The notes beneath the pieces were generated by a model that did no database searches, was not told the origin of the DNA, and worked only from the letters and a program-made list of their open reading frames with translations. The position numbers and the translations under genes were made by a program. From Ascidiella aspersa (Eukaryota), in contig OZ004612.1 of the NCBI GenBank assembly GCA_963924565.1, positions 8,990,001-9,054,000 on the forward strand: 64,000 bases of DNA. Direction: 5' to 3'. Every line of letters begins with the position of its first letter. Within the stretch, counting starts at the first letter, position 1. Below, one piece after another: positions 40,601 to 59,899 of this stretch.

Positions 40601-42454
40601 CTCGAATGAGGAATTAAGCAACTCATTCTGCTTCTGCGTGTATGCTGCTCTTTGTGTTTGTCCGTAAACACCTGGAGAGTGGAGGTGTGCTTTCTGTTTT
40701 CGCCAAATGCACGCTTCGTTAAATTTTCGGGCGTGCGTTTGCGCATTAGGCCGGCAGTTAAAACCGCCTATTCCGCATCGTTTATTAAATCCCTGAGCCT
40801 AATGGGATTTTTTTGGAAGCTAAGTTTGTTGAAAAACAAGTGATTTTCCCTAAATGAGTAAATGCGTTCATCTTATAGCCATTTTGAGCCGTTAAATTCT
40901 ACATGAGACTTTTGCCCTGTGCTCTTAATGTGTTTCCAAATTCGTGGGCTATGATGCAACTGTTCAATAATAGCGTTGAATGTCATAGGGGAGCTTGTTT
41001 AAATTATTTTTTGGCATTGTTTGTTTAGAAAGCTACCAACTTATGAAAAATACCTTTTTATCACGATTTTATAATTTACGCTGAAATTGAAGACTGATTT
41101 TAGCGACGTTTTTAGGAAACTATATCTTAAAAGCGTATTTTTGTGTTATTTGTGGCCAGATGTATACCAGTAGTTCAGCAAACAACCCTTGATCATTGGC
41201 GATCAAATTTCCTTTTAAAACTCTGAAAACCAATGCCCCTGTGATATGTTGCTCGCATCCTATCAATTGCTCATATCACATGTCGGGTTCCTGTAAACGC
41301 ATGATTCCCTCCACTGTTCGCCGGTTTGCGCTACTCAATGTTGGCTAAAACTCACGAATCGATTTGTTGAATCTCAGCTGGTTTGAGTATTTTTACTATC
41401 CATCGCTTTTTGCCCAGGTGTCGCCTTTCTAAGTATTTTAATTTGATTTATGTGACGTTTCGTACAAATAGGCAGGGTCTTACATTAGCTTTACATACCT
41501 TAATCAAATAGACGTAGAATGAATATCAAAGCCCATACAGAAGCAGGTAGCAAACGTTTTGAGTAATTTGTCATTCATTTTCAACTTGATCGAGAAAGCA
41601 CTTGTCTAATATACTGCAATCTCCCGCCAATATGCTTTTAAGTTAAATAAATTTATTCATGTAATTATACAGTCAAGTTTATTCATTATTATATTTCACA
41701 CACAACAGCCGTGCGCTTTGGTTGTGATTTGACAAACCCAATCTAAATCGAAACGTTCTTGTTTGTCAATCCGGTTTGATTTTTGAAATAATACACACAC
41801 CAGATGCCGCCGTGAATTCGGTCGCTTTTGTGTTAACCTTATTTAAATGGATATTTCGTTTTTACCAAGGCGGTTGGTCTCAACCAACACATGTAAATGC
41901 GCGCGTAGTTTCTCTGCTTGAAATGTCACACATCACCTATAAGAGGATTTTTCGTGTTTTACGAGAACTTACAACCTTGTCTACAAGCAATGCACATTGC
42001 AGAAGCACAGAGTATTTTTGCTTGCAGTCATACAACCAATTTGTTTCAATTTATGGTGTATACTATTCCTTTTTTTATTTTTGGCCTGCTTTTGTTTAAA
42101 TTTGGATTTACTTTTGGTCCTCGGTCTGACTTTCTCAGGTTTAAGATTTCCTAAACTTCTTCACAACTTGTAGATTCATTCGAATTAAAATATACTGGCG
42201 ATGACTTTGTCAGCAAAACATATATATCTTTTAACATATTTAAGTAGTCTCTGACCTGAATTACAAGCTTTGCTAGACTGTTACCGGTCATGAATTAAGG
42301 TCAATGTTCATCTTGCTTGGGTCAAGGTGATTTCCAATGTCACATATTCAGTCCAAGTTGTAGGTTACGTCTTTAACCAGGTCAACTCGTTTAACCCATA
42401 AAACACACAGTGCCTCACCAATTCAAACCTAATTTAACCCTTCTATCCCCACAG

Positions 42455-44345
42455 ACCGCCACTTCTCGCGTATGGTGTACCACTTGAGCTCTGACAGCGA
42501 CTTGCCTTCCCTCTGGACAGTCGAAGCGATGCGATCCATCTGCGAGAGTGAGCGACGACTTCTCTCTGCCCCGATCTACGGCCAGTTCTGCTTTCGTCAC
42601 GAGAACACCACCGGCTGTTGCCCGACCCTATCCCTACCCAACTTCGTCGCCTACCTGGACAAGCTGGGCACTTGCCGGGAAATCACCGGGGGCTCGCTGG
42701 ACCGGGTCGCCGCCCTGATAAGTTCCTGCGCGCCCCACTACTGCGCCGGCGCCCTGGGTCCCGAGTGCTGGGACCGCGGGGTGAACACGTGCCCAGAGCT
42801 TCCCCCCAAGTGCGTGGAAAACAACGCGGCACACGCGATGCTGCATTACCTTATGCCGAAAAGCGCGGCCTGCGCGAATTCCAGCGCCCCGTTCAACCTC
42901 ACCCTTAACTTGCGGCGAACAGCAGTCTTTATGCCAGCCTACAGCCGCTCAAACTTCCTCCCTGTGTACAAGAGCGTTTTCTCCGACCAAAAGCGCCTCA
43001 CAGATGGCGTAACTGAAATCCGCGGCATGCAGTTCGGCCTCAAGGACACGCTATTCTCTGAGCTTCTGTACGGCGAAACGCTTTACCCTGCCATAGCAAT
43101 GGGCTTAGTGCTGTTCATAATCCTGCTCTACACCGGCTCGCTGTTTGTAACAATCACCGGCTGCCTAATCTCGACCAGCGCCATGCTGATCGCCTATTTC
43201 CTCTACACGGTCGTCTTCGACTTCGGCTTCTTTCCCTTTATGAACATCACGGCCGTACTGGTGATGGTCGGACTCTCAGCCGACAACGTACTGGTCTTCC
43301 ACAGCGCCTGGCGCAGTTACGCGGCCGAGGACCGCCGCAAGGTCTGCCCGGGACAACGCCTTGGAAAGGCCGACTACCCGCTTCCCAGTCGCGTCGGCGT
43401 CGTGCTCAAGGCCACAATGGGCCACGTGGCCTGGTCCCTCTTCGTCACCGGCTTCACAACGGCCGCCGCCTTCCTAGCCAACTACGCCAGTTCGGTGACG
43501 GCGATCAAGTGCTTCGGCATGTACACGGGCCTGGCCGTGCTCACCAACCTTTTCCTCACGCTTAGCTGGCTGCCCGCCGCCATGGTGCTTCACCACAAGT
43601 ACCTGCGCTGCTGCACGCCCTGCCTATCCGGGTTTCGAACGCCGCCGCCCGTCGACGAAAAGCGCACAAGCGCGCTCACTTGCCTTGCAACGCGCTTGGC
43701 CAAGATCTCAGCCGCCGCTTCGGACTTGTCGCGGGTCTTTTTCCACCAGATCCAAGTCCTCCTGGTGGTGCGCCTGCGCTACTTCTGGCTAGCGCTTTAC
43801 GTAGCGCTGGCCGCCGGCAGCCTGTACATAGTGCTGCGCGATCCCGGGCTGCGGCTGCCCGACGCAAAGCACTACTTCCGCCACTTTGACGCCGCGCACC
43901 CTTTCGAGCTCTACGCGTCCGACGAGGCGCCGCAGTTCGCCTTCGAAAATGACGCGACGCAGCGCGCCCCGGTCCGCGTCATTTTCGGCGTGCGCGCTTC
44001 GGACGCCGGCGCCGCCACGGACCCGGACCGCTTGGGTCCCCTGGCCTTTCAATCGCGCTTCAACCTAACCGCGCGATCCTCGCAACGCTGGCTCGCTCGC
44101 TTTTGCGCAAACCTACGCTCCGCGCCCTTCTATCGCCAGGCGCCGGTAAGCGAGCGTTTTGCCTTCTGCTTTCTGGAGACCTTCCGCGCCTGGATGAAGT
44201 CGCGCCCGTGCACGCGCTCACGACGCGTCTGTTGCCGGCGCCAGTCTTTCCCTTACGCGCCCCACGTTTTCGAGCTGTGCCTCAAGGAAGCGTTGTACGC
44301 CATGAACGCGCGGATGTCTCTCGATAAGTGGACCGCCGGGCCGAG
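42455..44345 (+). CDS. disp1: Dispatched coding exon 5 (ECD1, sterol-sensing domain TM2-6, TM7, most of ECD2)
   Basis: Contains the 625-aa ORF. ACAG acceptor and AG|GTAAGA donor. Motifs include LW.VEAMRS.C, CCP..SL.N, FFPFMN, GLSADN, TGFTTAAAF.ANY.S and FCFLETF..WM. Confidence 0.97.
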
Positions 44346-48624: not shown

Positions 48625-48744
48625 CTACAGGTATATCCTGTCCACATGCCGATCGACCGGCTGTGCAGTCGTTGTTTTGACACTCTTGCCCAACGGTGGC
48701 TCGTTACAGTGTTCGTGCGCCACTCGAATGTGCCTTATGTTGGT
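48625..48744 (-). CDS. SH2-pseudokinase terminal exon (TNIRHIRVAHEHCNEPPLGKSVKTTTAQPVDRHVDRIYL*)
   Basis: GACAG acceptor, phase 0, 40 codons ending in TAG. Confidence 0.7.
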   Translation of the reverse strand, partial: TNIRHIRVAHEHCNEPPLGKSVKTTTAQPVDRHVDRIYL

Positions 48745-49766
48745 CTGTCAATTGGAAATAATGAACCGTTAATTAAAGAACTTTCGCCTAAAACCAAACT
48801 CTCTTTCTTATCGGTTTATTTTTCGATACTTTTAGTTGCTTCGTAACTACTTCGTCTAAATTTGAAATGTTAGTAAAAGTATGCTTCACGTGTGGAATTT
48901 TTTACCAACAACTCGAGAGGATTTTGTAAAAATAAATTATGTCAGTTTTTGGGGTTCTCAAAAAACCTGTGAGTGAAATACGAAGAAATTGACCATATAC
49001 GGTACTTTAAGTTCCCACTCATAAGAGCGCTGTCTTAAGTTATTTGGGTCGACGCAAAAAATAGTCCAGTAACACGGACTTATGTTCAAGTTATGGCGAT
49101 TTTCACCAAGAGACGTCAAGGCGCAGTCCAAGTTATTGACTTATTTGCCAATGGCCATTGGTATGAATAAACCTTAAAATATATTTGGTAAACTCAATAG
49201 ATTTGGAGCATCACTTGGCATCACAAATCAGCCAAAGCGAAACATAGAGAAAGCGAATTGTTTTACGGGTAAAACATAAATAAACTGATTTCGCCTTTTG
49301 GTTAAGCGACTTAAACTCAAGTTACGACATATATTACGAGGTCAAGTGGTCGAAAACACCAACCACCAGTGTCGTATGACTTAAAGTCAATGAGTGCACT
49401 TAAGTCACTGTTTTGAAACAACTGACTTAAGTCCTTTTAAGTGTAATGACTTGACTTGGATTTAATTAAATATGTCAAATTATATATATATTTTTAATTG
49501 AACAGAAATACATTTATTTTTAGGTTTCAACTTTTAAAATTTTTCTAACTTGTTGGATTGAATACTATTTAGGACTAGGTAAACTGACTATTCGCTTTAT
49601 TTTCGTCAAATAATACAAGAGATCTAATGAAATGATATTTTTTTTAGTTAGGACTCGACCTGTTTATTGTTGAAAAAACGACTTCAGAGTTATTTTTAAA
49701 ACGACTTAACTGCCACTTAAGTCATTGCAAACAGACTGAGGAGGTTAAATCACCACACACACTCAC

Positions 49767-49912
49767 AATAACTTTCTTGAACGTCGGTCTTTCAGTGGGC
49801 TCGTGGCGCCAGCACTTTTGCATCAAGTTGTAAATCGACTCGGGAAGGCCGGCCTGTCTCCCTGGTCGCATTCCGTCCTGTACGGCGCCCAGAATGCTTG
49901 GAAGTAGGATGT
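49767..49912 (-). CDS. SH2-pseudokinase exon, kinase subdomains X-XI (ILLPSILGAVQDGMRPGRQAGLPESIYNLMQKCWRHEPTERPTFKKVI)
   Basis: TTTAG acceptor and GTGAGT donor; tyrosine-kinase Y.LM..CW...P..RPTF signature. Confidence 0.92.
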
Positions 49913-51503
49913 CTAAAACGAATTGATATAAGTCATTTTGGCGAAAACAATTCGTTTTTTTACATGTGGCCAGGGGTAGATCTAAAGGTGTGTGTGGGGG
50001 GGGTGTCCATGTCCCCCCGAAAATGTATTTTTTTGCCCATTTTAGGTAAGCAAATACAAACAATTTTAGCGTTTCGCGCGAATTTAGTTATGTTTCTAGA
50101 ATGCATTCTTAGTCCATTTTAAGAAAATCATTTTAGCCCATGTGCGTCGTGCGTCCTATCGCACCCTCGAAAATAAAAGTTTTAAAACGATATAAAGACG
50201 TTATGCGCTTTGCGGTTCCATCACAGCGTTGAAACTTTTATAACGAAAGTAACACCTGTCCAATCTAAAACTTTAACAAAGCGAATCAAATCTGGGTGCT
50301 TTTAAGGTTATTTTATGACGTCGCATTTAGCTGTAACTTTGCGACGTCACATTTTGACTAGAGTTTGTAACGTAAAATTTTGGCGTAACTTTGAGACGTC
50401 TTTTCGGACAAAAAGGTATGACCACCCACAAAAAAAAATTGCCAGATCCGTGTGGGTATGCAAATGTAAGCACACACAGACAGAAGGCCACTGAAACGTT
50501 AAACCGTAAGGAAGGGATTTAATTTACGACAGGAGGCCGTAACCTTATGCCAGCGTTCGTCATTTTTGCATAAATTATTGGCTTGCTGATAGGAGAAGGA
50601 GGACCTTAGTATACAGATAAATGTATATACATAAACAAAAATTTAAACATAGGAATGCAGTAAAGGAATAAACCCAGCATTGAAACTTATAAATGAGCAA
50701 AAGTCTCTAAAGGTTATTTTACAGTCATATAATTTGTGATGCATTGGACCTAATGTGAAATTGAATATACCTTTCATATTTTATATCCCGTATAAATAAA
50801 AGCCCTGTTCAAAACAATAAAGGGCGCTAATCGCACAATATATTACTGTCGATGATTTACATTGGGGTTTGTGGGTTTGTGAGTTGTTTAAATTGCATAT
50901 CACAATCAGGGAAGGTTTGCTTGTCAGACTAACGTAACGCAAACCACACAAATTCGTGTGGGGTTTATTGCCTCTCTGAACATGGCGGCCACAAAATGCG
51001 GTAGTATTGTAATAAGCTTTTATTTCAAGGCTGCACGACTGCACGATTTGAGAAATAGGACTGAGTACAGGCCGATTTGTCGACTCGAATGTTTGCCTGT
51101 TTGCTGGGACCATTTGTCGTGCTTACCGGGAACAGCAAAGCATTTATTTTTATGAAGCCCAAGTATTTTAAAGTCATTCGGTGGGTTAACATCATGTTAA
51201 ATCCACATTGTAAACAAATAAAGGATTTCGGGCAAGGCATTAAACCAATTATGTTAAACGAAAAATAATTTAGTTTGTACAAATCGTCACGACAAAAATC
51301 TAGAAATATAGCATTGTGCTGACGTTATGGTTAAACTCGCATTGAAGGATATAATTTTGCTAAAACATATTCGCGAAGTTTTAGAAAAAAATAGTCTTAA
51401 TTTTCAACACCAGTTATGTGCTCATATAACGCAAAAACTCGATTTGGAAATAAACGAGAATAATGTTTGAAACAAGACAAGTAACTTTTGGAAGAGAATT
51501 TAC

Positions 51504-51644
51504 CTGCAAACGGCAATTCCCCTTTTGTGAAGAGTTCGTAAAGGAAAAACGCAAACGACCAAACGTCAGAAGCTGTCGAGAATCGACCAAACGATAAACC
51601 CTCCGTCGCCATCCAGCGGTACATGGACTTTTCGTACTGCTCGT
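51504..51644 (-). CDS. SH2-pseudokinase exon, subdomains VIII-IX (EQYEKSMYRWMATEGLSFGRFSTASDVWSFAFFLYELFTKGELPFA)
   Basis: Canonical splice sites, phase 1-1; RWMA.E and SDVWSF motifs. Confidence 0.93.
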
Positions 51645-52223
51645 CTAAAATACAGAAAAGCAATATTTTCTGTTTGTGAGCTTTCGCGGCAATTTCATTT
51701 TTTTTACCGACAAGTGATCTTTCATCTTTGTTATACTTTTGGTTCCTTTCAACAAAGTTTGCAATCTTCAGTGTTATAACATTGCATTAAATTGGCTAAT
51801 CAGCTTTCAGAATTAGCCGCGTATAGTTTCAGTAATTTAACTGAATTTATGCGAAATTAGCGAGTGGTGCATTTTCTTTAGCAAATTTACCGCGAAACTG
51901 GCTTATGCTGACCAACAAGCAGCCCGCTATACCGTAGCATAATAACTGCAGGGATTTTGTGGATAAGAAAACGCAAACAAACGTTTCAAACAAAAAATTG
52001 ATCAAAAAATTCGCCCAATCTTATCGATTACTGCCGACAAGCCATAAATTGAAATGACGATGTCTAAATGAGGCACCAAAATAACACTTGGAAAATCCCG
52101 AACGGTATAACAATGTCACATGGGGGCATTTAACCTCTGGTGCGTCGATCAGGGCAATCGATGCAACCAACTTATATAGCCGTACAACTTTGCAAATAAA
52201 ACAAAACACGCTTTAAAACGGAC

Positions 52224-52380
52224 CTGACTTTGCGAAGTAGAAACCGTTCTCGTTAAGGCTTTCCGCGTAACTGAAGCCAGTCAGTTTTGCATTGAGGTCG
52301 TTGTCCACCAGCAGGTTGGCAGCTCGTACGTTGCGGTGGACGAACCGCATAGACGATATGTAGTCCAGGGCAGACGCCAG
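52224..52380 (-). CDS. SH2-pseudokinase exon, subdomains VIa-VII (LASALDYISSMRFVHRNVRAANLLVDNDLNAKLTGFSYAESLNENGFYFAKS)
   Basis: TACAG acceptor and G|GTCCGT donor, phase 0-1. Catalytic loop reads HRNVRAAN and the DFG position reads GFS. Confidence 0.92.
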
Positions 52381-53708
52381 CTGTAATAGGTAAAATGCAA
52401 AAACTTATTTTGTTTTGAAAATCAGTAGCGCACCAGTTTCCCGAAGGAAGATAGGTGTTAAGTTATGGTGGGGCGTGGATTCAAAACGTGTTTAAAATTT
52501 AACTAACGAAAAGAAGTATCTTGTAGAATGAGGATTAACAAACATTTTTAAAACAGATAAAAAGTAATCAAAAGTCAAAGTGTTGCATTCCTTGTTGAAG
52601 TGTGTAAAACCAAACTTTAAAGGCAGATTAAAAAGTTTAAAGAACTAATATAATGTTGCATTCTTTGTGGATGTGGACTAAAGGAATAAAAAACAAGTTA
52701 TGTCAAGGGGAAAATTCCGGTGCGGCATTCCCCAAGTCTTCGCAAATCGAGTAAGCTCGTAAAATATATTTATACCTCGCTAAATACGTCACGGTATTGT
52801 TACCGGAATGCAACAGCTTCTCATTAAAGTGATTACCAGTGATTTACTGAAGGCGAGGAGCACGACATGCAACTATTTTTATCATTTTAAAATAAAAAGG
52901 CCAATGTTGGTGTGTTAACGGACGAATTTATGTAGTGGAACACTTGTAAACTAAACTATTTATCGACTTTGAATGAAGGCTTAATATATTTTAAGTTATT
53001 ACACAGTGAACATACAAATCGTTAAAACCTCAAAAATATTGCGAACTTAAGCTATAGTAATAAAGAAATAACGTTTAATTTTGCGATACTTCCGGATCCG
53101 TCTTGAATTGGTCATATAACAGCATGCTGGTCAATAACATATTTGACTTTTAATAAAAAAGCGAAGCAGCTTAAAATTTGCCTGTTAGCCAAAGCGTCAG
53201 CCAGACATATTTTAAACACCATTTACGAGTTCCTTGACGGTTGACGACATAAAATGTACAGGAAAATTTAGGAACGGTAAAGCTAAACACATTTGTGTTT
53301 GGTCAACACTACGTGACTTTAAGCATGCTACTGTGGTTTTGTTGTACTTCCCACGCGATGTTTATCGCCGAGACACCATCTGGTAACCCGGTCGAGTGTG
53401 TATTTTGTTTTGGAAACGGTGAATGGTGCAAATCTTTTAAGGTTTTTATTTTAACGGAACGTTTATTTTGCGAAAAAACAACAATTTTGTAATGTGTTTT
53501 AAAATATCTGTTTTCTGTATCAAATTAGGGAACGTGGCTTTAATATTTTGTTTTGCCCTTAGAGCTATCACCACTTACAAAAAATATAGAAACGTTAAAA
53601 AAAGCAATGGCTTAAAAGTTGTCAGACAAGCATGGCAAAACTCTTGCCAGATTTTTTGGCGCTTGTGAATAGAAATGAAGTCTAAATTAGAACGTCAATT
53701 TTCCTAAC

Positions 53709-53831
53709 CTGTTCAGCGACCACAAGCAGCTGACTGAATGCCGTTTCGTAGCAGTCATTTTGCAGCAGAAATCCGAGAAGGTCTCGATTCTGGTGATATT
53801 CGGTGACCACACAGCTTGGAAACGGCGTGAC
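53709..53831 (-). CDS. SH2-pseudokinase exon, hinge to alphaE (VTPFPSCVVTEYHQNRDLLGFLLQNDCYETAFSQLLVVAEQ)
   Basis: TTCAG acceptor and CAG|GTTAGG donor, phase 0-0; VVTEY hinge with a Thr gatekeeper. Confidence 0.88.
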
Positions 53832-54373
53832 CTGAACAAGGCAAAGGCATTTGAGAACATTCCGAGAAATAAATAACCTCCAATGACCACTTGGGTTGTT
53901 CTGTTGAGCTTCTTAGAAACGTATTCCAACCACTCGTCATAAGCCGTTCAAATACGCCCGCTGTACTAACATCTGGCAAACGAGAATTGTTTATAAAAGG
54001 TTAATTTAGACTTGAATCACCGAATTCGAAAAAACTAGTAATCGTATTAAAATCTAAACAACAATTACTTTTATTAAATTCACAATTTTTGATTGTTGAT
54101 AAAATAGCGTTTTTAGGTAGACTGTAAATCTCAAAGATTAGAAAATAAGCATCAGATTTGTAGAACTGTATGTTTTCTTACCAAGTTAATAATGAGACAT
54201 ATCACCAAACCGCACTTGGCCTTCTCTGTAACTTTAAATGCGATTATTACTATTGCCAAAGTATAATATTTAAGGTAAATTATGTGTATATATTATTATT
54301 GCCCCTCCCCTGGACATTTTTCGGTCTCTGGACATCATGCCCAATGAAAACCATTAGCACAAATGATTCTCAC

Positions 54374-54513
54374 CACTCCGACGAGACGCACGATGTTTGA
54401 GTGCTTGAGGATCTTCAGGACGGATGCTTGTTCCATGATCCGCTCCCCTCCCTCTTCACCACCGTTCTTCTGCATCTTGACAGCTACAAGACCCCCAGTC
54501 TCATCCAGTGTGG
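54374..54513 (-). CDS. SH2-pseudokinase exon, beta3-alphaC-beta4 (TLDETGGLVAVKMQKNGGEEGGERIMEQASVLKILKHSNIVRLVGV)
   Basis: AACAG acceptor and GTGAGA donor, phase 1-0; VAVK and H.NIVRL.GV motifs. Confidence 0.92.
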
Positions 54514-55594
54514 CTGTTATAATTGTTATATGGTAAATAAAAATCGATTTTAGGTAACCGTCACGAACAGGTCCATACTGGAAAATAAACAGACCGCCTC
54601 GTTAAAGGATACCGTTTTCCAATTTTCTTTATAACGATAGAGAAATAAAGCCCGTAAAAATCGTTCGGGAAACATTTACTGTACTGTGAAAATAGTTTAT
54701 CGCAGTCAAAAATATTTACTGCACCGTCAGATGTGTTTGTTTGGTTCGCTTCCCTGCTGGAACATTTTCGCTATAAAATAAATTAATAAAAGAAAGGTTT
54801 TGCCTATTGTGTACAACAGTTCGATATTTAACTATACGTTTAAATGGTATACAATGCATGCCTTTCTTTTAAATAAAGTGAATGCCACAAAAGCCTGCTG
54901 TAACCAAAATAGAACAATAGTCGATGCCCGGCAATTGTTATAATCAAAATATTTCAGCCTCGCTTATTCCTGATATAATTCGTGAATTCATAAACCTCAT
55001 CCAAACATTTAAATGCTAGGTTTGAACTGCAAATATGCCCTTTTATCTAAATGCTGTGAGTTACAACAAAAATAGCCTAAAATGACTTGAGTGACTCCCA
55101 AGCACCCCGGGGTTTATAATTATCCGGCAAACTATAGAATGTCCAATTCACGTATGTATATGCCCTTGTTTGGTTACCTTCGGCAACGAAACATTACTGT
55201 AATAAAACAACCCATAGCAGTGAACCCTTAGGCCGACATCCCTTAAAAGAGACATGATCCTCAGCTAAGAAACTTTACTGGAATGGCCTTAAAAAGTTAG
55301 ATATTATAAAAGCGTAAGAATAGTGACATCGCAGCCCAAGCTGATATTTAAAATGAGGCAAAAACACTTTTGTCATTATTTTATTGATCTAAGTTAATCA
55401 GCGACATTAAAATTATTCTATAAGTCTGAGGAACTTTACTCTTCAAACATCAAAAAAATTGTTTTGTCATCGTTTAAGATAAACAATTACCTTTCTAATC
55501 CCATCTACACATTTTGAACCAAGACGACAAATTTTGTATATACACTAAATCGTATACCGAATCTTTTAAAGTCACGTTAGTAAAAGCCAATCAC

Positions 55595-55744
55595 CTTTCC
55601 AAACCTCGGCGGGCTTCTCACGATGCGACGATATCTTCTCGATGAACGTGAGCTTATCCCTGCTCATCTCCACTCCAGACGTGTTCTTCCTCCTGCTGCC
55701 TGAGTAAGGCGAGGTCAGACGAGTTCGCATGCTGGTCACTGTCT
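55595..55744 (-). CDS. SH2-pseudokinase exon, SH2 end, linker and degenerate P-loop (TVTSMRTRLTSPYSGSRRKNTSGVEMSRDKLTFIEKISSHREKPAEVWK)
   Basis: CCCAG acceptor and G|GTGATT donor, phase 1-1. TRL..P marks the SH2 end, E..R..L the linker and EVWK beta2. Confidence 0.82.
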
Positions 55745-55779
55745 CTGGGTTGACATATTTGATGGACATTTTAAATTGA

Positions 55780-56336
55780 CGTTCAACTGTATACTTTTGA
55801 GCAAACTCTACTGATGCGTTTAAGTCAAGCACGTATTAATCGCCCGCCACCCATTAGACATGAAAAAGTTTTTTGTAGGGATAGGTTCAAAACATCTGGT
55901 CTCTACTGAAACTCCATCTACGAAATACGTTCAACTGTACTTTGAAGCAAGCTCACTTAAGTTAAGCACGTATTAATCGCCCGGCACCCATTAGACATGA
56001 AAAAGTTTTTTGTAGGGATAGGTTCAAAACATCTGGTCTCTACTGAAACTCCATCTACGAAATACGTTCAACTGTACTTTGAAGCAAGCTCACTTAAGTT
56101 AAGCACGTATTAATCGCCCGGCACCCATTAGACATGAAAAAGTTTGTTTTAGGGAGAGGTTTAAAACATCTGGTCTCTACTGAAACTTCATCTACGAAAT
56201 ACGTTCAACTCTACTTTAAGCAAGCTCACTTAAGTTAAGCAAGTATTAATCGCCCGACACCCATTAGACATGACAAAGTTTTTGTAGGGATAAGTTCAAA
56301 ACATCTGATCTCTACTAAAACTTCATCTACGAAATA
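55780..56336. repeat. Tandem array of four ~137-bp units
   Basis: CGTTCAACT starts at 55780, 55928, 56065 and 56202; units are near-identical and the first is slightly longer. Confidence 0.95.
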
Positions 56337-57284
56337 TCCGTTTCTAACCATCAGCAGTAAAGAGATTTTATTTGTGTGTCACACAGGTTCGGTGTTTTGT
56401 TGTGGTCACCCGGAAACAACGTGACAATATAACGATTGGCACAAGCTTCAGTTCTTATAGTCATGGTAAAATTTTACTTTTTTATACACGCTTAAATAAC
56501 CAAAACGGTTCCCAAAAACATATTAGAAAATTTTAGAAACATAATATCCCGTACAAAAACAAAACTCGCTTTCAATGATTTTATGTAAAAATCCCCTAAA
56601 GGCGGTAATAATCTTATTTATTATTTTACGGCTGTTAGTTCGACTCTACTTTTCTGCTAAAATGAGTCTTTGTGAAGACTTTCTGACTTTTTTTATCAAT
56701 AGAAAATTATGTAAATAAAGACTGCTGGTTGCTTCAAAGCTACTGTATGAGCTCAGGGGTATTATTTTCGTTGTACAGTAGACATAGAGATATAAAAATA
56801 AGATTTGTACAACAAGTGTCATTTTCCTATTAAAACACTATATAGCAACGCTTCTCCCAAGTGATACCGGCCCACTAAATATTTATCCACGCTTGTCTAA
56901 AATTGGATGTTTGTACACCTGTAGGCCTAAAGGCGTTCCTTTCTGTTAAAACAACATGAAAAATTTACGGATGGTCATACATTCGCAGCAGTTGCGAAGC
57001 TCTACAAAGTTTGTAATTGGGCAGGGTTAACGCCCATAGCAAGACCTATTTTATATTGCGATAACGAGAGGATCTTTACTTTGGTCAAGTTAAGAAATGA
57101 ACAAAACTTGCTAGAAAAACGAAGTTAGAGAAGGCATGAATCGACAGACAAGCAATTTCCTTAAACTCGTCCTTTTGTCGCTCTTTATAGATCAGTATTT
57201 TACAAACCTGCAATATCTGTTTCTTCGGGCTAAAAATAAAGATCTACCGATACCGGTCAAGAAAACCGAAACGATCAAACTTAC

Positions 57285-57437
57285 CTTGGTAGTATTGTAT
57301 AAGCTGTTCCACGGTTGGGAAGCAGACCATGGGGTCAATGTAGTATTCCCCAGACAGGTTGACCTGGATCTTGCAATGGAAGATCTTACACTGGCCATCT
57401 CGCCATTCCAACACCGAGAGTCGATACGGGTCAGAGA
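57285..57437 (-). CDS. SH2 domain, C-terminal half (SDPYRLSVLEWRDGQCKIFHCKIQVNLSGEYYIDPMVCFPTVEQLIQYYQ)
   Basis: TCTAG acceptor and G|GTAAGT donor, phase 1-1; Y.LSV, H.KI and F.T..ELI.YY-type SH2 motifs. Confidence 0.92.
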
Positions 57438-58230
57438 CTAGACAAAGTAAAATAATGTATGGATTCTGGCTGGGTTGTTTCCATTGGCCAAATCGTAAAG
57501 ATGAGTCGCTGAACAAGTCAGTAATGGTCTGAGCTCAGTCCTGACTACATTTCTCCACTGGGGCGCAGCCAAGATTTCTCCGCCAAGAAAGAAGTGCCCG
57601 AGTTTGAACTGCGTATGCTGGCATTACGTAAACTTTTAACCTTTTTTGTTTGTGATGTTGGTTTACCTAAATCCTGTAGTAGCTTAGTGAAAACACAAAG
57701 AACGAAGGTGTTTGCTCGTATATAAGCTGTGCGGAAAACCAGAAATGTAGATCCAAATTAGGCAATATAGGCGCCATGCCTACCCTATTAGAATAACCGC
57801 TATGTAAAATGTGCGGCAGTAATTGTATTTCTTTGTAATGTGTGGAGATCTTTCTAACGTTGTACAAAGTACATATATTGCGAAATTATTATTTCCAATT
57901 CAGGTTATGTCTATACGTGACGATATGAGGGTCACCAAATTTGCTTTGTCAAACTATAAAACACTTACATTGATTTGCAAAGACAAATTGATTTATTTTT
58001 CCCTCAGACAACACTCATGTTTTCCAATATATTGGGTACAACATTTTTAATTTTTTGAGCAACGCTTAAAATATCCTTTTTCCAGGTGGATTAAAACCAG
58101 ATTTCCTTAAGGATAGAATATTTTTAACTTTTTCACTATATCGTTGGCAGCCGACCGAATTCGAAACATCGGTGTAACATATTTTTCCTTTACGTTATTT
58201 CAGTTTACTTTCAACTCGAAAACGTCCTAC

Positions 58231-58334
58231 CTGTGCTGGGCCTTGCATCTCGCACGAGAAAGGTACCCTCGTCTTGCCCATCTTGTAACAACTTGATTTC
58301 GGCATCTATTCGCGAAATTGTCCCAAGGTACCAC
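58231..58334 (-). CDS. SH2 domain, N-terminal half (WYLGTISRIDAEIKLLQDGQDEGTFLVRDARPST)
   Basis: AAAG acceptor and G|GTAGGA donor, phase 2-1; WY.G.ISR..AE..L and GTFLVR motifs. Confidence 0.93.
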
Positions 58335-59803
58335 CTTTAATAAGTTTGGATAAGATGAATTAAATTGATTACAAATTGGCGTTTTTTTTAATAGCACACT
58401 ATCTTTATCGTTTTATAAAAGCTATAGTAATAGAAATTATATAATAGTGGGGGCTCTATCTGCACTAGCTTGCATACGATAGGTAGATTTGAGATTTTTG
58501 GCTCAGAAGTTTTCTTTAGCGTTTAATATGTAATAACATAAAAACGCAAAATCAAATTTATAAAACTGATTAGAATGAGGGGGTAGTAGCACACCGAAAT
58601 CGAGTTGGCTCCAAGCAGAAATAAAAATAAAACACCAAAATGAACATCTGTGCCAAAAATCTCACGTCTATCTATCGTATGTATGCCAGATTTTCTTTTG
58701 ACACATAGTTCCCTCACTATATAATTATGACCCTGCGCGGTAACAGACTAACACGGCTGTAAGACAAAACGTTTTGGTAGTAGCGACAAAACCATTTGCC
58801 GTCGACCCAATTTTTAAGATTAAAACTTGCTCCTAATGCTTTGAAGTGTTTTTTTGAACGATCGTAATTTGGCAGTTATAGTTTAAAAACTTTAAATTCA
58901 TGCATGCGAGCACGTATTTTTTTAAACCATTATTCGCACTATTTTGAATCAAGGAGTAAGGGTATGGACACATTTTAGCATCGGACTCTTGTTTAGTTGG
59001 TCGACCTGTTATCTATTAGAAGTATTCGCCCTATTTATTCCAAACCGCTTTTTAAGTGCTACCTAAATGCTTTAGGCGTTGAGACACGATTTACGACCAA
59101 TTCTTGCGCGTACTAATTGCGCCGTGACAAAAACACGACACGTATCCGGGTTTGTGTCCCCTAAACATGCATCCACACACGGTGATTTCGTGTCAGGTAC
59201 ATTGGCACTAAAACAATTGCAGCTTGCCAAAATACGTAGGTCCGGTATAAGTGCATTTCTTACTAAAAAAATGAGCTTAGCGATTGACGATAACGCTGAA
59301 ATAAAAAGAATACATAAAAACAGAAACGGCTATTTACATAAAATATCTAAGCGGTCGTCACCTATATTATGAAAACATGAGTTGCAGAATTTCAAGTTAA
59401 AAGTTCATACATTGGCTATATACTGCTTTTAAAATGACAGGTCACCGATCAAGTATTTTAGGCAAGTTACGAAAACACTGATGAATTTCGTCGAATACAC
59501 ATATCGAAAAGTTTTTTGTCGAAAACGTTTTTAAACAGCGAAATGTCAATTTCATCGAATATATTCGCTTTACTATTTTTTTGGAATTACTTAAAAACGT
59601 GTATTGTGTTCTAAAGTTGTTTGTATAGGTTTACTAATATGTTAATATTACAAAGTAAATCGTGAAACGGAGGCCATTGTCCTTGAAACAAGTAACATCA
59701 CATAGTGAAGGTTTTGCCTATAGTAAAACACTTCAAAAAGGTTCATACAAATTACCGTCAACGGTAAATACGTTTTCAAAAACCTAAAAATACTTTTACT
59801 TAC

Positions 59804-59899
59804 GGAAAGTGTTTAAACTGCTCCCGCCGCGGGCTCGTGGGAGTCTGAAAGACTTCGTAGCCTGCCTCTTCCAAAGTCATTGCTGGCGTGGTCGTACAA
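59804..59899 (-). CDS. SH2-pseudokinase exon preceding the SH2 (CTTTPAMTLEEAGYEVFQTPTSPRREQFKHFP); possible start ATG at 59880
   Basis: TAGCAG tandem acceptor and CC|GTAAGT donor; phase 2 gives FPWYLG. From ATG 59880 the spliced CDS is 1311 nt (436 aa plus stop). Confidence 0.75.

What the first reader, a model, noticed from the sequence alone, without database searches (positions are those of the whole stretch)
48625..59899. Intact multi-exon SH2 plus tyrosine pseudokinase with most catalytic motifs degraded
Seen in the sequence: ten exons splice with GT-AG sites and matching phases into about 436 aa with no stop or frameshift. The GxGxxG loop reads SSHREKPA. The alphaC Glu position is Gln (IMEQA against the usual F..EA, codon 54428-54430). 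HRD is HRN (52330-52338), DFG is GFS (52270-52278) and APE is ATE. VAVK, the Thr gatekeeper, SDVWSF and CW...RPTF are kept. Established: loss of the HRD and DFG aspartates and the Gly loop defines pseudokinases. The familiar tyrosine-type pseudokinases are receptors (ErbB3, which also has HRN; PTK7; RYK) or JAK JH2 domains paired with an active kinase. Inference: this is a stand-alone cytoplasmic SH2-pseudokinase, derived from a Src/Tec/Fer-like kinase (Src-type RAAN loop), acting as a phosphotyrosine-recruited scaffold or dominant-negative regulator. I do not recognise it as a described family.
Basis: partly seen in the sequence, partly recalled or inferred. Interest (0 to 1): 0.82.

Follow-up and report, generated by a model that had tools for sequence, protein, structure and literature searches.

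The report
Ascidian Src-derived SH2 pseudokinase gene
This is a real, spliced and expressed sea-squirt gene for a Src-like protein that keeps its phosphotyrosine-binding SH2 domain and kinase fold but has lost the residues needed for catalysis; it belongs to a small family seen so far only in ascidians, which databases call "Lck-like kinase" and nobody appears to have described as a pseudokinase.

Summary
Ten minus-strand exons with GT..AG introns join in phase into 436 aa with no stop (acceptor 55744). SH2 and tyrosine-kinase Pfam hits fall on separate exons. HRN, GFS and IMEQA sit at the stated coordinates.

RNA-seq reads of the same species join exon 6 to exon 7 exactly as predicted. Four differences seen in a close relative or a second haplotype inside firm exons are all synonymous.

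The gene is not an orphan:
- A paralogue with the same intron positions, also HRN and GFS, lies head-to-head about 10 kb away, just outside the window.
- Full-length relatives exist in Ciona intestinalis (XP_002123919.1, auto-named "Lck-like") and Clavelina lepadiformis. All are SH2 plus kinase fold without SH3, and all lack the HRD and DFG aspartates.
- The five proteins form one clade (100/100).

Descent from Src is supported. The closest solved relatives are c-Src, Fgr and Hck. The kinase-part introns and the RAAN loop match Src-type genes of the same genome.

I read it as a phosphotyrosine-recruited, non-catalytic adaptor or modulator of Src-family signalling. No paper in the library describes the family; one used the Ciona member as "Ciona Lck".

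Verdict: a new variant of a known kind, of moderate interest. The mechanism is inferred, not shown.

The parts
59804..59880 (-). Exon 1: ATG at 59880 and a short N-terminus with a Tyr motif (AGYEVF). No Gly2 myristoylation site. Donor GT at 59803.
   Evidence: An N-terminal Tyr stands at the same place in the Ciona and Clavelina proteins. The exon itself has no RNA support here.
58231..58334 (-). Exon 2: N-terminal half of the SH2 domain (WYLG...FLVRDA), with the FLVR arginine kept.
   Evidence: Pfam SH2 E = 4.6e-8; phases.
57285..57437 (-). Exon 3: C-terminal half of the SH2 domain (YRLSVL...HCKIQ...QLIQYYQ).
   Evidence: Pfam SH2 E = 2e-5; phases.
55595..55744 (-). Exon 4: SH2-kinase linker and the degraded Gly-rich loop (ISSHREKPAEVWKG). 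An in-frame alternative acceptor lies at 55810.
   Evidence: In the close relative, 55784 C>A would make a stop inside 55745-55810, which favours acceptor 55744. No RNA reads cover this exon.
54374..54513 (-). Exon 5: beta3 Lys kept (VAVK); alphaC reads IMEQA, with Gln at 54428-54430 where the Glu should be.
   Evidence: Pfam PK_Tyr E = 8.6e-6; RNA depth 2.8 in this bin.
53709..53831 (-). Exon 6: hinge with a Thr gatekeeper (VVTEY).
   Evidence: The junction 53709 to 52380 is seen in 4 RNA reads.
52224..52380 (-). Exon 7: catalytic loop HRNVRAAN (HRN at 52330-52338), GFS in place of DFG (52270-52278), and the activation-loop Tyr (NGFYF).
   Evidence: Pfam E = 1.1e-9; RNA junction and depth. 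The two differences in the relative, at 52291 and 52315, are synonymous.
51504..51644 (-). Exon 8: WMATE in place of APE, and SDVWSF.
   Evidence: Pfam E = 1.1e-12. The variant at 51640 is synonymous.
49767..49912 (-). Exon 9: C-lobe with CWRHEPTERPTF.
   Evidence: Pfam E = 8.4e-8; phases.
48625..48744 (-). Exon 10: C-terminal tail of 39 aa ending ...DRIYL, then the stop at 48627-48625.
   Evidence: There is no homology or RNA support for this exon; it is the least certain one.

Best explanation
The locus is a functional, expressed ascidian gene of 436 aa. The protein has a short N-terminus with a tyrosine motif, an intact SH2 domain and a tyrosine-kinase fold that cannot catalyse phosphotransfer.

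It belongs to a family seen so far only in ascidians. The family arose by duplication of a RAAN-type Src-family gene, lost the SH3 domain and the myristoylation site, and lost the HRD and DFG aspartates before the sampled lineages split.

Inferred mode of action: the SH2 domain (FLVR Arg kept) takes the protein to phosphotyrosine sites. The dead kinase domain serves as a docking or allosteric surface. Its conserved activation-loop Tyr and N-terminal Tyr could be phosphorylated by active Src-family kinases. The protein would then work as an adaptor or competitor within Src-type signalling.

This copy has gone furthest in the family. It has no glycine left in the Gly loop and lacks the alphaC Glu, so it probably does not bind ATP at all.
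For: Shown:
- Ten in-phase GT..AG exons with no stop.
- Pfam SH2 and kinase hits on separate exons.
- The exon 6/7 junction in 4 RNA-seq reads, with RNA depth essentially confined to bins holding exons.
- All 4 differences inside firm exons are synonymous.
- A head-to-head paralogue has identical intron positions and phases, and also HRN and GFS.
- Ciona and Clavelina relatives have the same SH2 plus kinase architecture and carry HRN or HRS with GFG or SFG.
- Further unnamed exon fragments carry HRN with GFG or GFS.
- The five proteins form one clade at 100/100. Identity is 36-46% inside the family and 28-31% to active Src-likes.
- The Ciona member aligns over SH2 plus kinase best to c-Src (211 bits), then Fgr (194), Hck (190) and Abl (155).
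- An AF2 model of the Clavelina member has mean pLDDT 84, and its best fold matches are c-Src, Fgr and Hck.
- The kinase-part intron positions equal those of the HRDVRAAN Src-type genes L015, L017 and L018 of this genome.

Established knowledge: the HRD Asp is the catalytic base and the DFG Asp binds Mg-ATP, so loss of both abolishes canonical phosphotransfer.
Against: - No biochemical data exist for any member.
- RNA support is thin: about 23 reads from roughly 6% of one run, and only one junction reached the listing threshold.
- Exons 1, 4 and 10 have no RNA support.
- The joined protein itself could not be searched or folded, so structure statements rest on an orthologue at about 43% identity.
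- The synonymous-only evidence is four sites.
- No member turned up among annotated Styela clava proteins, although Styela DMC1 is in the same database. The family may therefore be patchy among tunicates.
- The roles of the tyrosine motifs are pure inference.
Confidence: 0.8

Rival explanations
1. It is still an enzyme. It could be an atypical kinase that phosphorylates with a relocated base or metal ligand, as WNK or CASK do, or at a weak level as reported for HER3. It could also use the fold for a different chemistry.
For: The beta3 Lys (VAVK) and the catalytic-loop Asn (HRNVRAAN) are kept throughout the family, and most members keep the alphaC Glu. HER3 also has HRN (established knowledge).
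Against: Both the catalytic Asp and the Mg-binding DFG Asp are gone in every member. The Gly loop is down to one glycine, and to none in this copy, which also has a 2-residue insertion. This copy lacks the alphaC Glu as well.
Confidence: 0.07
2. This particular copy is a young, decaying duplicate. It is still open and transcribed by inertia, while the functional gene is the neighbouring paralogue.
For: It is the most degraded member, having lost all Gly-loop glycines and the alphaC Glu. It sits alone as sister to the other four in the tree (88/91). Expression in the one RNA run is low.
Against: It is only 36% identical to the neighbour, so the duplication is old. Even so, all ten exons remain open with canonical splice sites. 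Its branch length (0.85) is like that of the other members. The four exon differences are all synonymous. The SH2 pocket residues are intact. The fragment P0010 from another assembly shares its GFS form.
Confidence: 0.06
3. It is a misassembled or mispredicted piece of an ordinary Src-family kinase gene, with SH3 exons and active-site residues elsewhere.
For: The first exon is supported only by weak motif similarity.
Against: HRN and GFS are read directly from the assembly. A contig of the DNA run X1 lies on exon 7 with no differences. RNA reads cover exon 7 and show only the synonymous change at 52291. The Ciona RefSeq models and the Clavelina proteins begin about 20-25 residues before the SH2 domain and have no SH3 hit. 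No SH3-like frame was seen in the 10 kb up to the paralogue.
Confidence: 0.02

Closest known systems
Src-family kinases (c-Src, Fgr, Hck, Lck)
   Same: The SH2-linker-kinase order is the same. They are the best sequence and fold matches. The RAAN catalytic-loop signature is shared. The kinase-part intron positions equal those of the Src-type genes of the same genome. The activation-loop Tyr is kept.
   Different: There is no SH3 domain and no Gly2 myristoylation site. HRD reads HRN, DFG reads GFS, the Gly loop is lost, APE reads ATE, and the linker Trp reads Val. The long stem branch (0.99) sets the family apart.
Ciona intestinalis 'tyrosine-protein kinase Lck-like' (XP_002123919.1 / XP_078491687.1) and the Clavelina lepadiformis unnamed proteins P0029, P0151 and P0152
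   Same: Same architecture, same loss of both aspartates, WMAxE in place of APE, and an N-terminal Tyr. They form one clade with the window gene at 100/100.
   Different: Identity is only 37-43%. They keep one Gly-loop glycine and the alphaC Glu, have GFG or SFG rather than GFS, and a Leu gatekeeper rather than Thr. They are automatic predictions named as active kinases.
JAK JH2 pseudokinase domains
   Same: A tyrosine-kinase-type pseudokinase preceded by an SH2-like domain in a cytoplasmic protein.
   Different: JH2 is followed by an active JH1 kinase in the same chain and preceded by a FERM domain. The JAK SH2-like domain binds receptors constitutively. JAKs are not the closest relatives here.
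HER3/ErbB3
   Same: HRN in place of HRD; it signals as an allosteric partner or scaffold rather than as an enzyme (established knowledge).
   Different: It is a receptor with no SH2 domain. It keeps the DFG Asp and binds ATP.
SLAP/SLA (Src-like adaptor protein) and Chk/Matk
   Same: Functional analogy only, from knowledge: these are Src-related proteins that modulate Src-family signalling without needing catalysis.
   Different: SLAP keeps SH3-SH2 and has no kinase fold. Chk is an active Csk-type kinase. Neither was compared here by sequence.

Membership tests
Protein tyrosine kinase fold (Pfam PF07714) | Significant match to the PK_Tyr_Ser-Thr profile across the domain | tested here: met
   Four exons each exceed the gathering score and match profile positions 23-70, 107-158, 162-222 and 213-255. 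The orthologues match 2-258 of 258 at about 2e-58.
Pseudokinase (operational definition) | Lacks at least one of the beta3 Lys, the HRD Asp and the DFG Asp | tested here: met
   HRN at 52330-52338 and GFS at 52270-52278. The Lys is kept (VAVK). Absence of activity itself was not testable here.
Src-family kinase | SH3 domain N-terminal to the SH2 domain | tested here: not met
   Reading the open frames of 59900-70200 on both strands showed no SH3-like sequence; these frames were not scanned with the Pfam profile. The orthologues have no Pfam SH3 hit.
Src-family kinase | N-terminal Met-Gly myristoylation signal | tested here: not met
   The predicted N-terminus is MTLEE. The orthologues start MSSN, MAYE and MSYV.
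Src-family kinase | Catalytically competent kinase domain (GxGxxG, HRD, DFG, APE) | tested here: not met
   The motifs read SSHREKPA, HRN, GFS and ATE.
Src-family kinase | C-terminal regulatory tyrosine that binds the protein's own SH2 domain | tested here: inconclusive
   The tail ends ...DRIYL. The paralogue has NYITM and Clavelina b has RYITT. There is no conserved YQP-type motif, and phosphorylation cannot be tested here.
Src-family kinase (descent, not membership) | Closest sequence and fold relatives, with shared gene structure | tested here: met
   c-Src scores 211 bits against Abl 155. Foldseek's top hits are c-Src, Fgr and Hck. The introns at P0155 positions 270, about 315, 355, 407, 451 and 499 are shared with L015, L017 and L018. 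The RAAN loop is shared.
Ascidian SH2-pseudokinase family ('Lck-like' of Ciona) | One clade with the Ciona and Clavelina proteins, same architecture, and shared loss of the HRD and DFG aspartates | tested here: met
   Clade support is 100/100. HRN or HRS with [GS]F[GS] is present in all members. The family scores at least 576 bits and the next protein 229 bits.
SH2 domain able to bind phosphotyrosine | alphaA Arg, betaB5 Arg (FLVR) and betaD His/Lys present | tested here: met
   ISRID, FLVRDA and FHCKI are read in exons 2-3. Binding itself is not testable with these tools.

The most novel reading that the evidence does not exclude
Ascidians carry a dedicated, Src-derived, stand-alone SH2-pseudokinase family. 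It acts as a phosphotyrosine-recruited decoy or allosteric partner of active Src-family kinases. That would make it a kinase-fold counterpart of the vertebrate SLAP and Chk type of regulation, and the first cytoplasmic tyrosine-kinase pseudokinase family that is not tethered to an active kinase domain.
Probability: 0.35. Interest if true: 0.65.

Novelty: new variant of a known kind. Interest (0 to 1): 0.5.

Why it matters
Known tyrosine-type pseudokinases are receptors (HER3, PTK7, RYK, ROR, EphA10/B6, STYK1) or JAK JH2 domains fused to an active kinase. A free cytoplasmic SH2 plus dead-kinase protein that descends from Src and has been kept in several ascidian lineages would be a natural experiment. 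It shows what the Src kinase fold does without catalysis and without SH3 clamping.

It is directly testable in Ciona, an established model for electroporation and CRISPR.

It also has a practical side. The Ciona member is auto-named "Lck-like" and has already been used as "Ciona Lck" in a published tree (PMC8211107). Annotation-based inferences about tunicate Lck or Src biology therefore need correcting.

Tried and rejected
- The joined spliced protein was not sent to any search or fold tool. Searches went exon by exon by reference, and database orthologues stood in for the whole protein.
- The word search cannot see full-length relatives of a 52-aa exon, so I went to the representatives search with a two-row profile of exon 7. 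Its top ranks were swamped by multi-kinase proteins whose scores are summed, and the family had to be picked out among the single-stretch hits.
I could therefore not name the source of the exon fragments P0008, P0010, P0023, P0031 and P0054, nor check synteny or gene structure in Ciona and Clavelina, nor compute dN/dS against a near species.
- A first fragment alignment misplaced the poorly conserved exons 1, 4 and 10. They were left out of the identity table and the tree.
- The longer exon 4 (acceptor 55810, 458 aa) was my first model. I rejected it because the close relative has a stop inside the extension, and because the shorter form still holds the segment homologous to the orthologues' KL..P motif.
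- The first exon of the paralogue was not found.
- Six literature searches found no description of the family.
- Complex prediction was not used, because no specific partner is claimed.
Full report
THE OBSERVATION

The window is AT-rich eukaryotic DNA. On the minus strand, between 48.6 and 59.9 kb, a row of open frames carries recognisable SH2 and tyrosine-kinase sequence.

I listed every GT and AG in those frames together with its phase, then checked the chosen set. Ten exons with GT..AG introns on all nine junctions join in phase and end at a stop at 48627-48625.

Two acceptors for exon 4 are in frame. Acceptor 55810 gave 1377 nt (458 aa).

Pfam's SH2 profile hits exons 2 and 3 separately (4.6e-8, 2e-5). 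PK_Tyr_Ser-Thr hits exons 5, 7, 8 and 9 separately, in collinear profile positions. Chance is therefore excluded.

The ATG is at 59880 rather than 59899.

IS IT TRANSCRIBED AND CONSTRAINED?

One RNA-seq run labelled with the same species was available, as raw reads of which about 6% were read. It put 23 reads on 49821-55820.
- Apart from a repeat in intron 8, RNA depth falls only in bins that hold exons (strongest over exons 5, 6 and 7), and there all first mates lie on the + strand.
- Four reads with four different starts join 53709 to 52380 with CT..AC ends. That is the predicted exon 6/7 junction on the minus strand.
- The other junctions did not reach the listing threshold, so expression is low in that sample.

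Contigs of a close relative (organism B) and of a second haplotype differ from the window at four places inside firm exons: 51640, 52291, 52315 and 55737. All four are synonymous third-position changes.

A fifth difference, at 55784, would turn GAA into TAA inside the 55745-55810 extension. That model also keeps the linker segment (MRTRLTSP) that lines up with KLVAP/KLTxxC of the orthologues.

A 137-bp tandem repeat (3.8 copies) fills intron 3 right up to 55820.

A PARALOGUE NEXT DOOR

Searching the window's own genome with exon 7 gave one outstanding hit 16 kb beyond the window's end (2.7e-10, 42% identity); the other hits were ordinary kinases. I fetched that DNA and found a second gene on the plus strand, head-to-head with the first, at C6:9,060,206-9,071,656.
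- It has the same SH2 plus kinase exons, and every intron sits at the same position and phase.
- It too reads HRN and GFS.
- It keeps the alphaC Glu (LQEA) and part of the Gly loop (HEGKGAN).
- Its first exon was not found.
- The two genes are only about 36% identical, so the duplication is old and both copies have stayed open.
- No SH3-like frame lies in the about 10 kb between them.

RELATIVES ELSEWHERE

The joined protein has no reference, so I did not search it. A profile of exon 7 from both paralogues (A1) went to the representatives search. Among the single-stretch hits were:
- two full-length proteins, P0029 (428 aa) and P0066 (384 aa);
- several exon-sized fragments, all with HRN followed by GFG, SFG or GFS.

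Word searches with P0029 and with a three-row family profile found only these close relatives:
- Clavelina lepadiformis proteins P0029, P0151 and P0152, all on one contig;
- Ciona intestinalis "tyrosine-protein kinase Lck-like" isoforms X1 and X2 (XP_002123919.1 / XP_078491687.1 and XP_078491688.1).

The family scores at least 576 bits and the next protein 229 bits. All members are SH2 plus kinase fold without SH3.

The gene beside the paralogue is DMC1. Its best named matches are Clavelina (93%) and Styela (89%), so the window comes from an ascidian. No Styela member of the family turned up, although Styela proteins are in that database.

FAMILY ANATOMY

- HRD reads HRN (HRS in one Clavelina copy).
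- DFG reads GFG, SFG or GFS.
- The Gly loop is reduced to one glycine. This copy has none, and has a two-residue insertion.
- The beta3 Lys is kept everywhere.
- The alphaC Glu is kept everywhere except in this copy.
- The catalytic-loop Asn is kept.
- APE reads A[LTV]E.
- The activation-loop Tyr (G-x-Y) is kept.
- SDVWSF and CW..RP.F are kept.
- The SH2 FLVR Arg and the betaD His/Lys are kept.
- A Tyr lies within the first eight residues (AGYEVF, NAYDTV, MAYEAA, MSYVNL).
- Tail tyrosines are present but not conserved in context.

The window gene is thus the most degraded member.

DESCENT

For the identity table and the tree I worked in a local script. The exon peptides of the two local genes were aligned as separate fragments to the orthologue alignment, and their rows were laid together. 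Nothing joined was printed or sent to a search.

The five pseudokinases form one clade (100/100) on a long stem. The window gene is sister to the other four (88/91).

- The Ciona protein aligns over SH2 plus kinase best to c-Src (211 bits), then Fgr (194), Hck (190) and Abl (155).
- An AlphaFold model of P0029 has mean pLDDT 84, above 90 over most of the kinase domain. Foldseek's best matches are c-Src, Fgr and Hck.
- The predicted SH2-kinase arrangement superposes better on Fes and on the extended form of Abl (rmsd 9-14 Å) than on clamped Src (16-17 Å). At pTM 0.67 I do not lean on that.

Within the window's genome, the exon boundaries of three Src-type genes on contig C4 (L015, L017, L018; catalytic loop HRDVRAAN) fall at the same positions as those of the kinase part of the window gene. 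A fourth gene with HRDLAARN (L016) has different introns. The family therefore descends from a RAAN-type Src gene by DNA-level duplication, not by retroposition.

HOW IT MOST LIKELY WORKS

Shown:
- an intact, spliced, conserved SH2 plus kinase-fold protein that lacks the catalytic base and the Mg-binding Asp.

From established kinase enzymology:
- it cannot carry out canonical phosphotransfer;
- without Gly-loop glycines, DFG Asp and alphaC Glu, this copy is unlikely to hold ATP.

Inferred:
- the SH2 domain recruits the protein to phosphotyrosine sites;
- the dead kinase domain is a docking or allosteric surface;
- the conserved N-terminal and activation-loop tyrosines are substrates of active Src-family kinases;
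- the protein is thus an adaptor, or a competitor for SH2 ligands, in Src-type signalling.

Rivals:
- residual or atypical catalysis (0.07);
- a decaying copy (0.06);
- a misprediction of a normal Src gene (0.02).

LITERATURE

Six searches found no description of such a family. The holozoan tyrosine-kinome survey PMC8662651 does not mention tunicates or a Src-derived pseudokinase in its main text.

The only paper in the library that cites the Ciona accession uses it as "Ciona intestinalis Lck" in a tree (PMC8211107).

LIMITS

- RNA support is thin.
- Exons 1, 4 and 10 lack RNA support.
There is therefore no synteny, no naming of the fragment sources, and no dN/dS against a near species.
- I had no named panel of Csk, Abl, Tec and Frk sequences for a rooted tree.
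- The joined protein was neither searched nor folded.

VERDICT

The gene is a member of an ascidian Src-derived SH2-pseudokinase family that is present in databases but mis-named and undescribed. I rate it a new variant of a known kind, interest 0.5.

Noticed in passing
G000:C6:9060206-9071656 (+); L011 6206-7099 and L013 4014-7656: A paralogous SH2-pseudokinase gene lies head-to-head with the window gene, just outside the window. It has the same intron positions and also HRN and GFS, but keeps the alphaC Glu and has a Phe gatekeeper. Its tail carries NYITM and a Lys-rich end. The first exon was not found, and its 6.9-kb intron 2 holds transposon-like frames.
   Followed up: partly
L013 9774-9998 and L012 2-820 (G000:C6:~9073774-9074820, +): A DMC1 (meiotic recombinase) gene lies directly downstream of the paralogue. 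It is 93% identical to Clavelina lepadiformis DMC1 and 89% to Styela clava DMC1, which places the genome among the ascidians.
   Followed up: partly
window 55820-56336: A 137-bp tandem repeat of 3.8 copies (94% matches) lies in intron 3 and reaches up to exon 4. Its copies each carry a short ATG frame (MKKFFVGIGSKHLV...) on the plus strand.
   Followed up: no
window 50183-50400: A high-copy repeat lies in intron 8. DNA contig depth rises from about 70 to 450-830, with many loose ends at 50183, 50245 and 50277-50280. A few RNA reads also lie there.
   Followed up: no
window 51645-52223 and 52381-53708 (introns 7 and 6): The assembly's source run holds a second haplotype with about 26 single-base differences and several small indels in these introns. 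There is also a 318-base stretch (52955-53272) that the second haplotype replaces with 11 other letters. The only exon difference on that haplotype is the synonymous 51640.
   Followed up: partly
protein P0159 (376 aa, ENA assembly, organism unknown): An apparently independent SH2 plus kinase-fold protein of the Src type. It has NFS for DFG, VTVI for VAIK and a degraded Gly loop, but keeps HRD. It is close to an active SH3-less relative, P0154.
   Followed up: no
protein P0118 (139 aa, Logan contig): A fragment that is otherwise very Src-like (FPIKWTAPEA, SDVWSFG) but reads HRN and GFR. It may be another Src-derived pseudokinase, or an intermediate form.
   Followed up: no
G000:C4:34.69 Mb, 32.60 Mb and 13.95 Mb (L015, L017, L018), and C4:4.14-4.31 Mb (L005-L007): Several Src-type genes (HRDVRAAN) lie on contig C4. 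Three near-identical tandem kinase exons (HRDLAARN...SDFGLSR) lie at 4.14, 4.19 and 4.31 Mb.
   Followed up: no
PMC8211107, legend of the Lck tree: The Ciona pseudokinase XP_002123919.1 was used as 'Ciona intestinalis Lck' in a published phylogeny. The automatic name was taken at face value.
   Followed up: yes
window 42001-44000: This segment has GC 0.556 against about 0.38-0.41 around it. It lies where earlier notes place a Dispatched-like gene.
   Followed up: no
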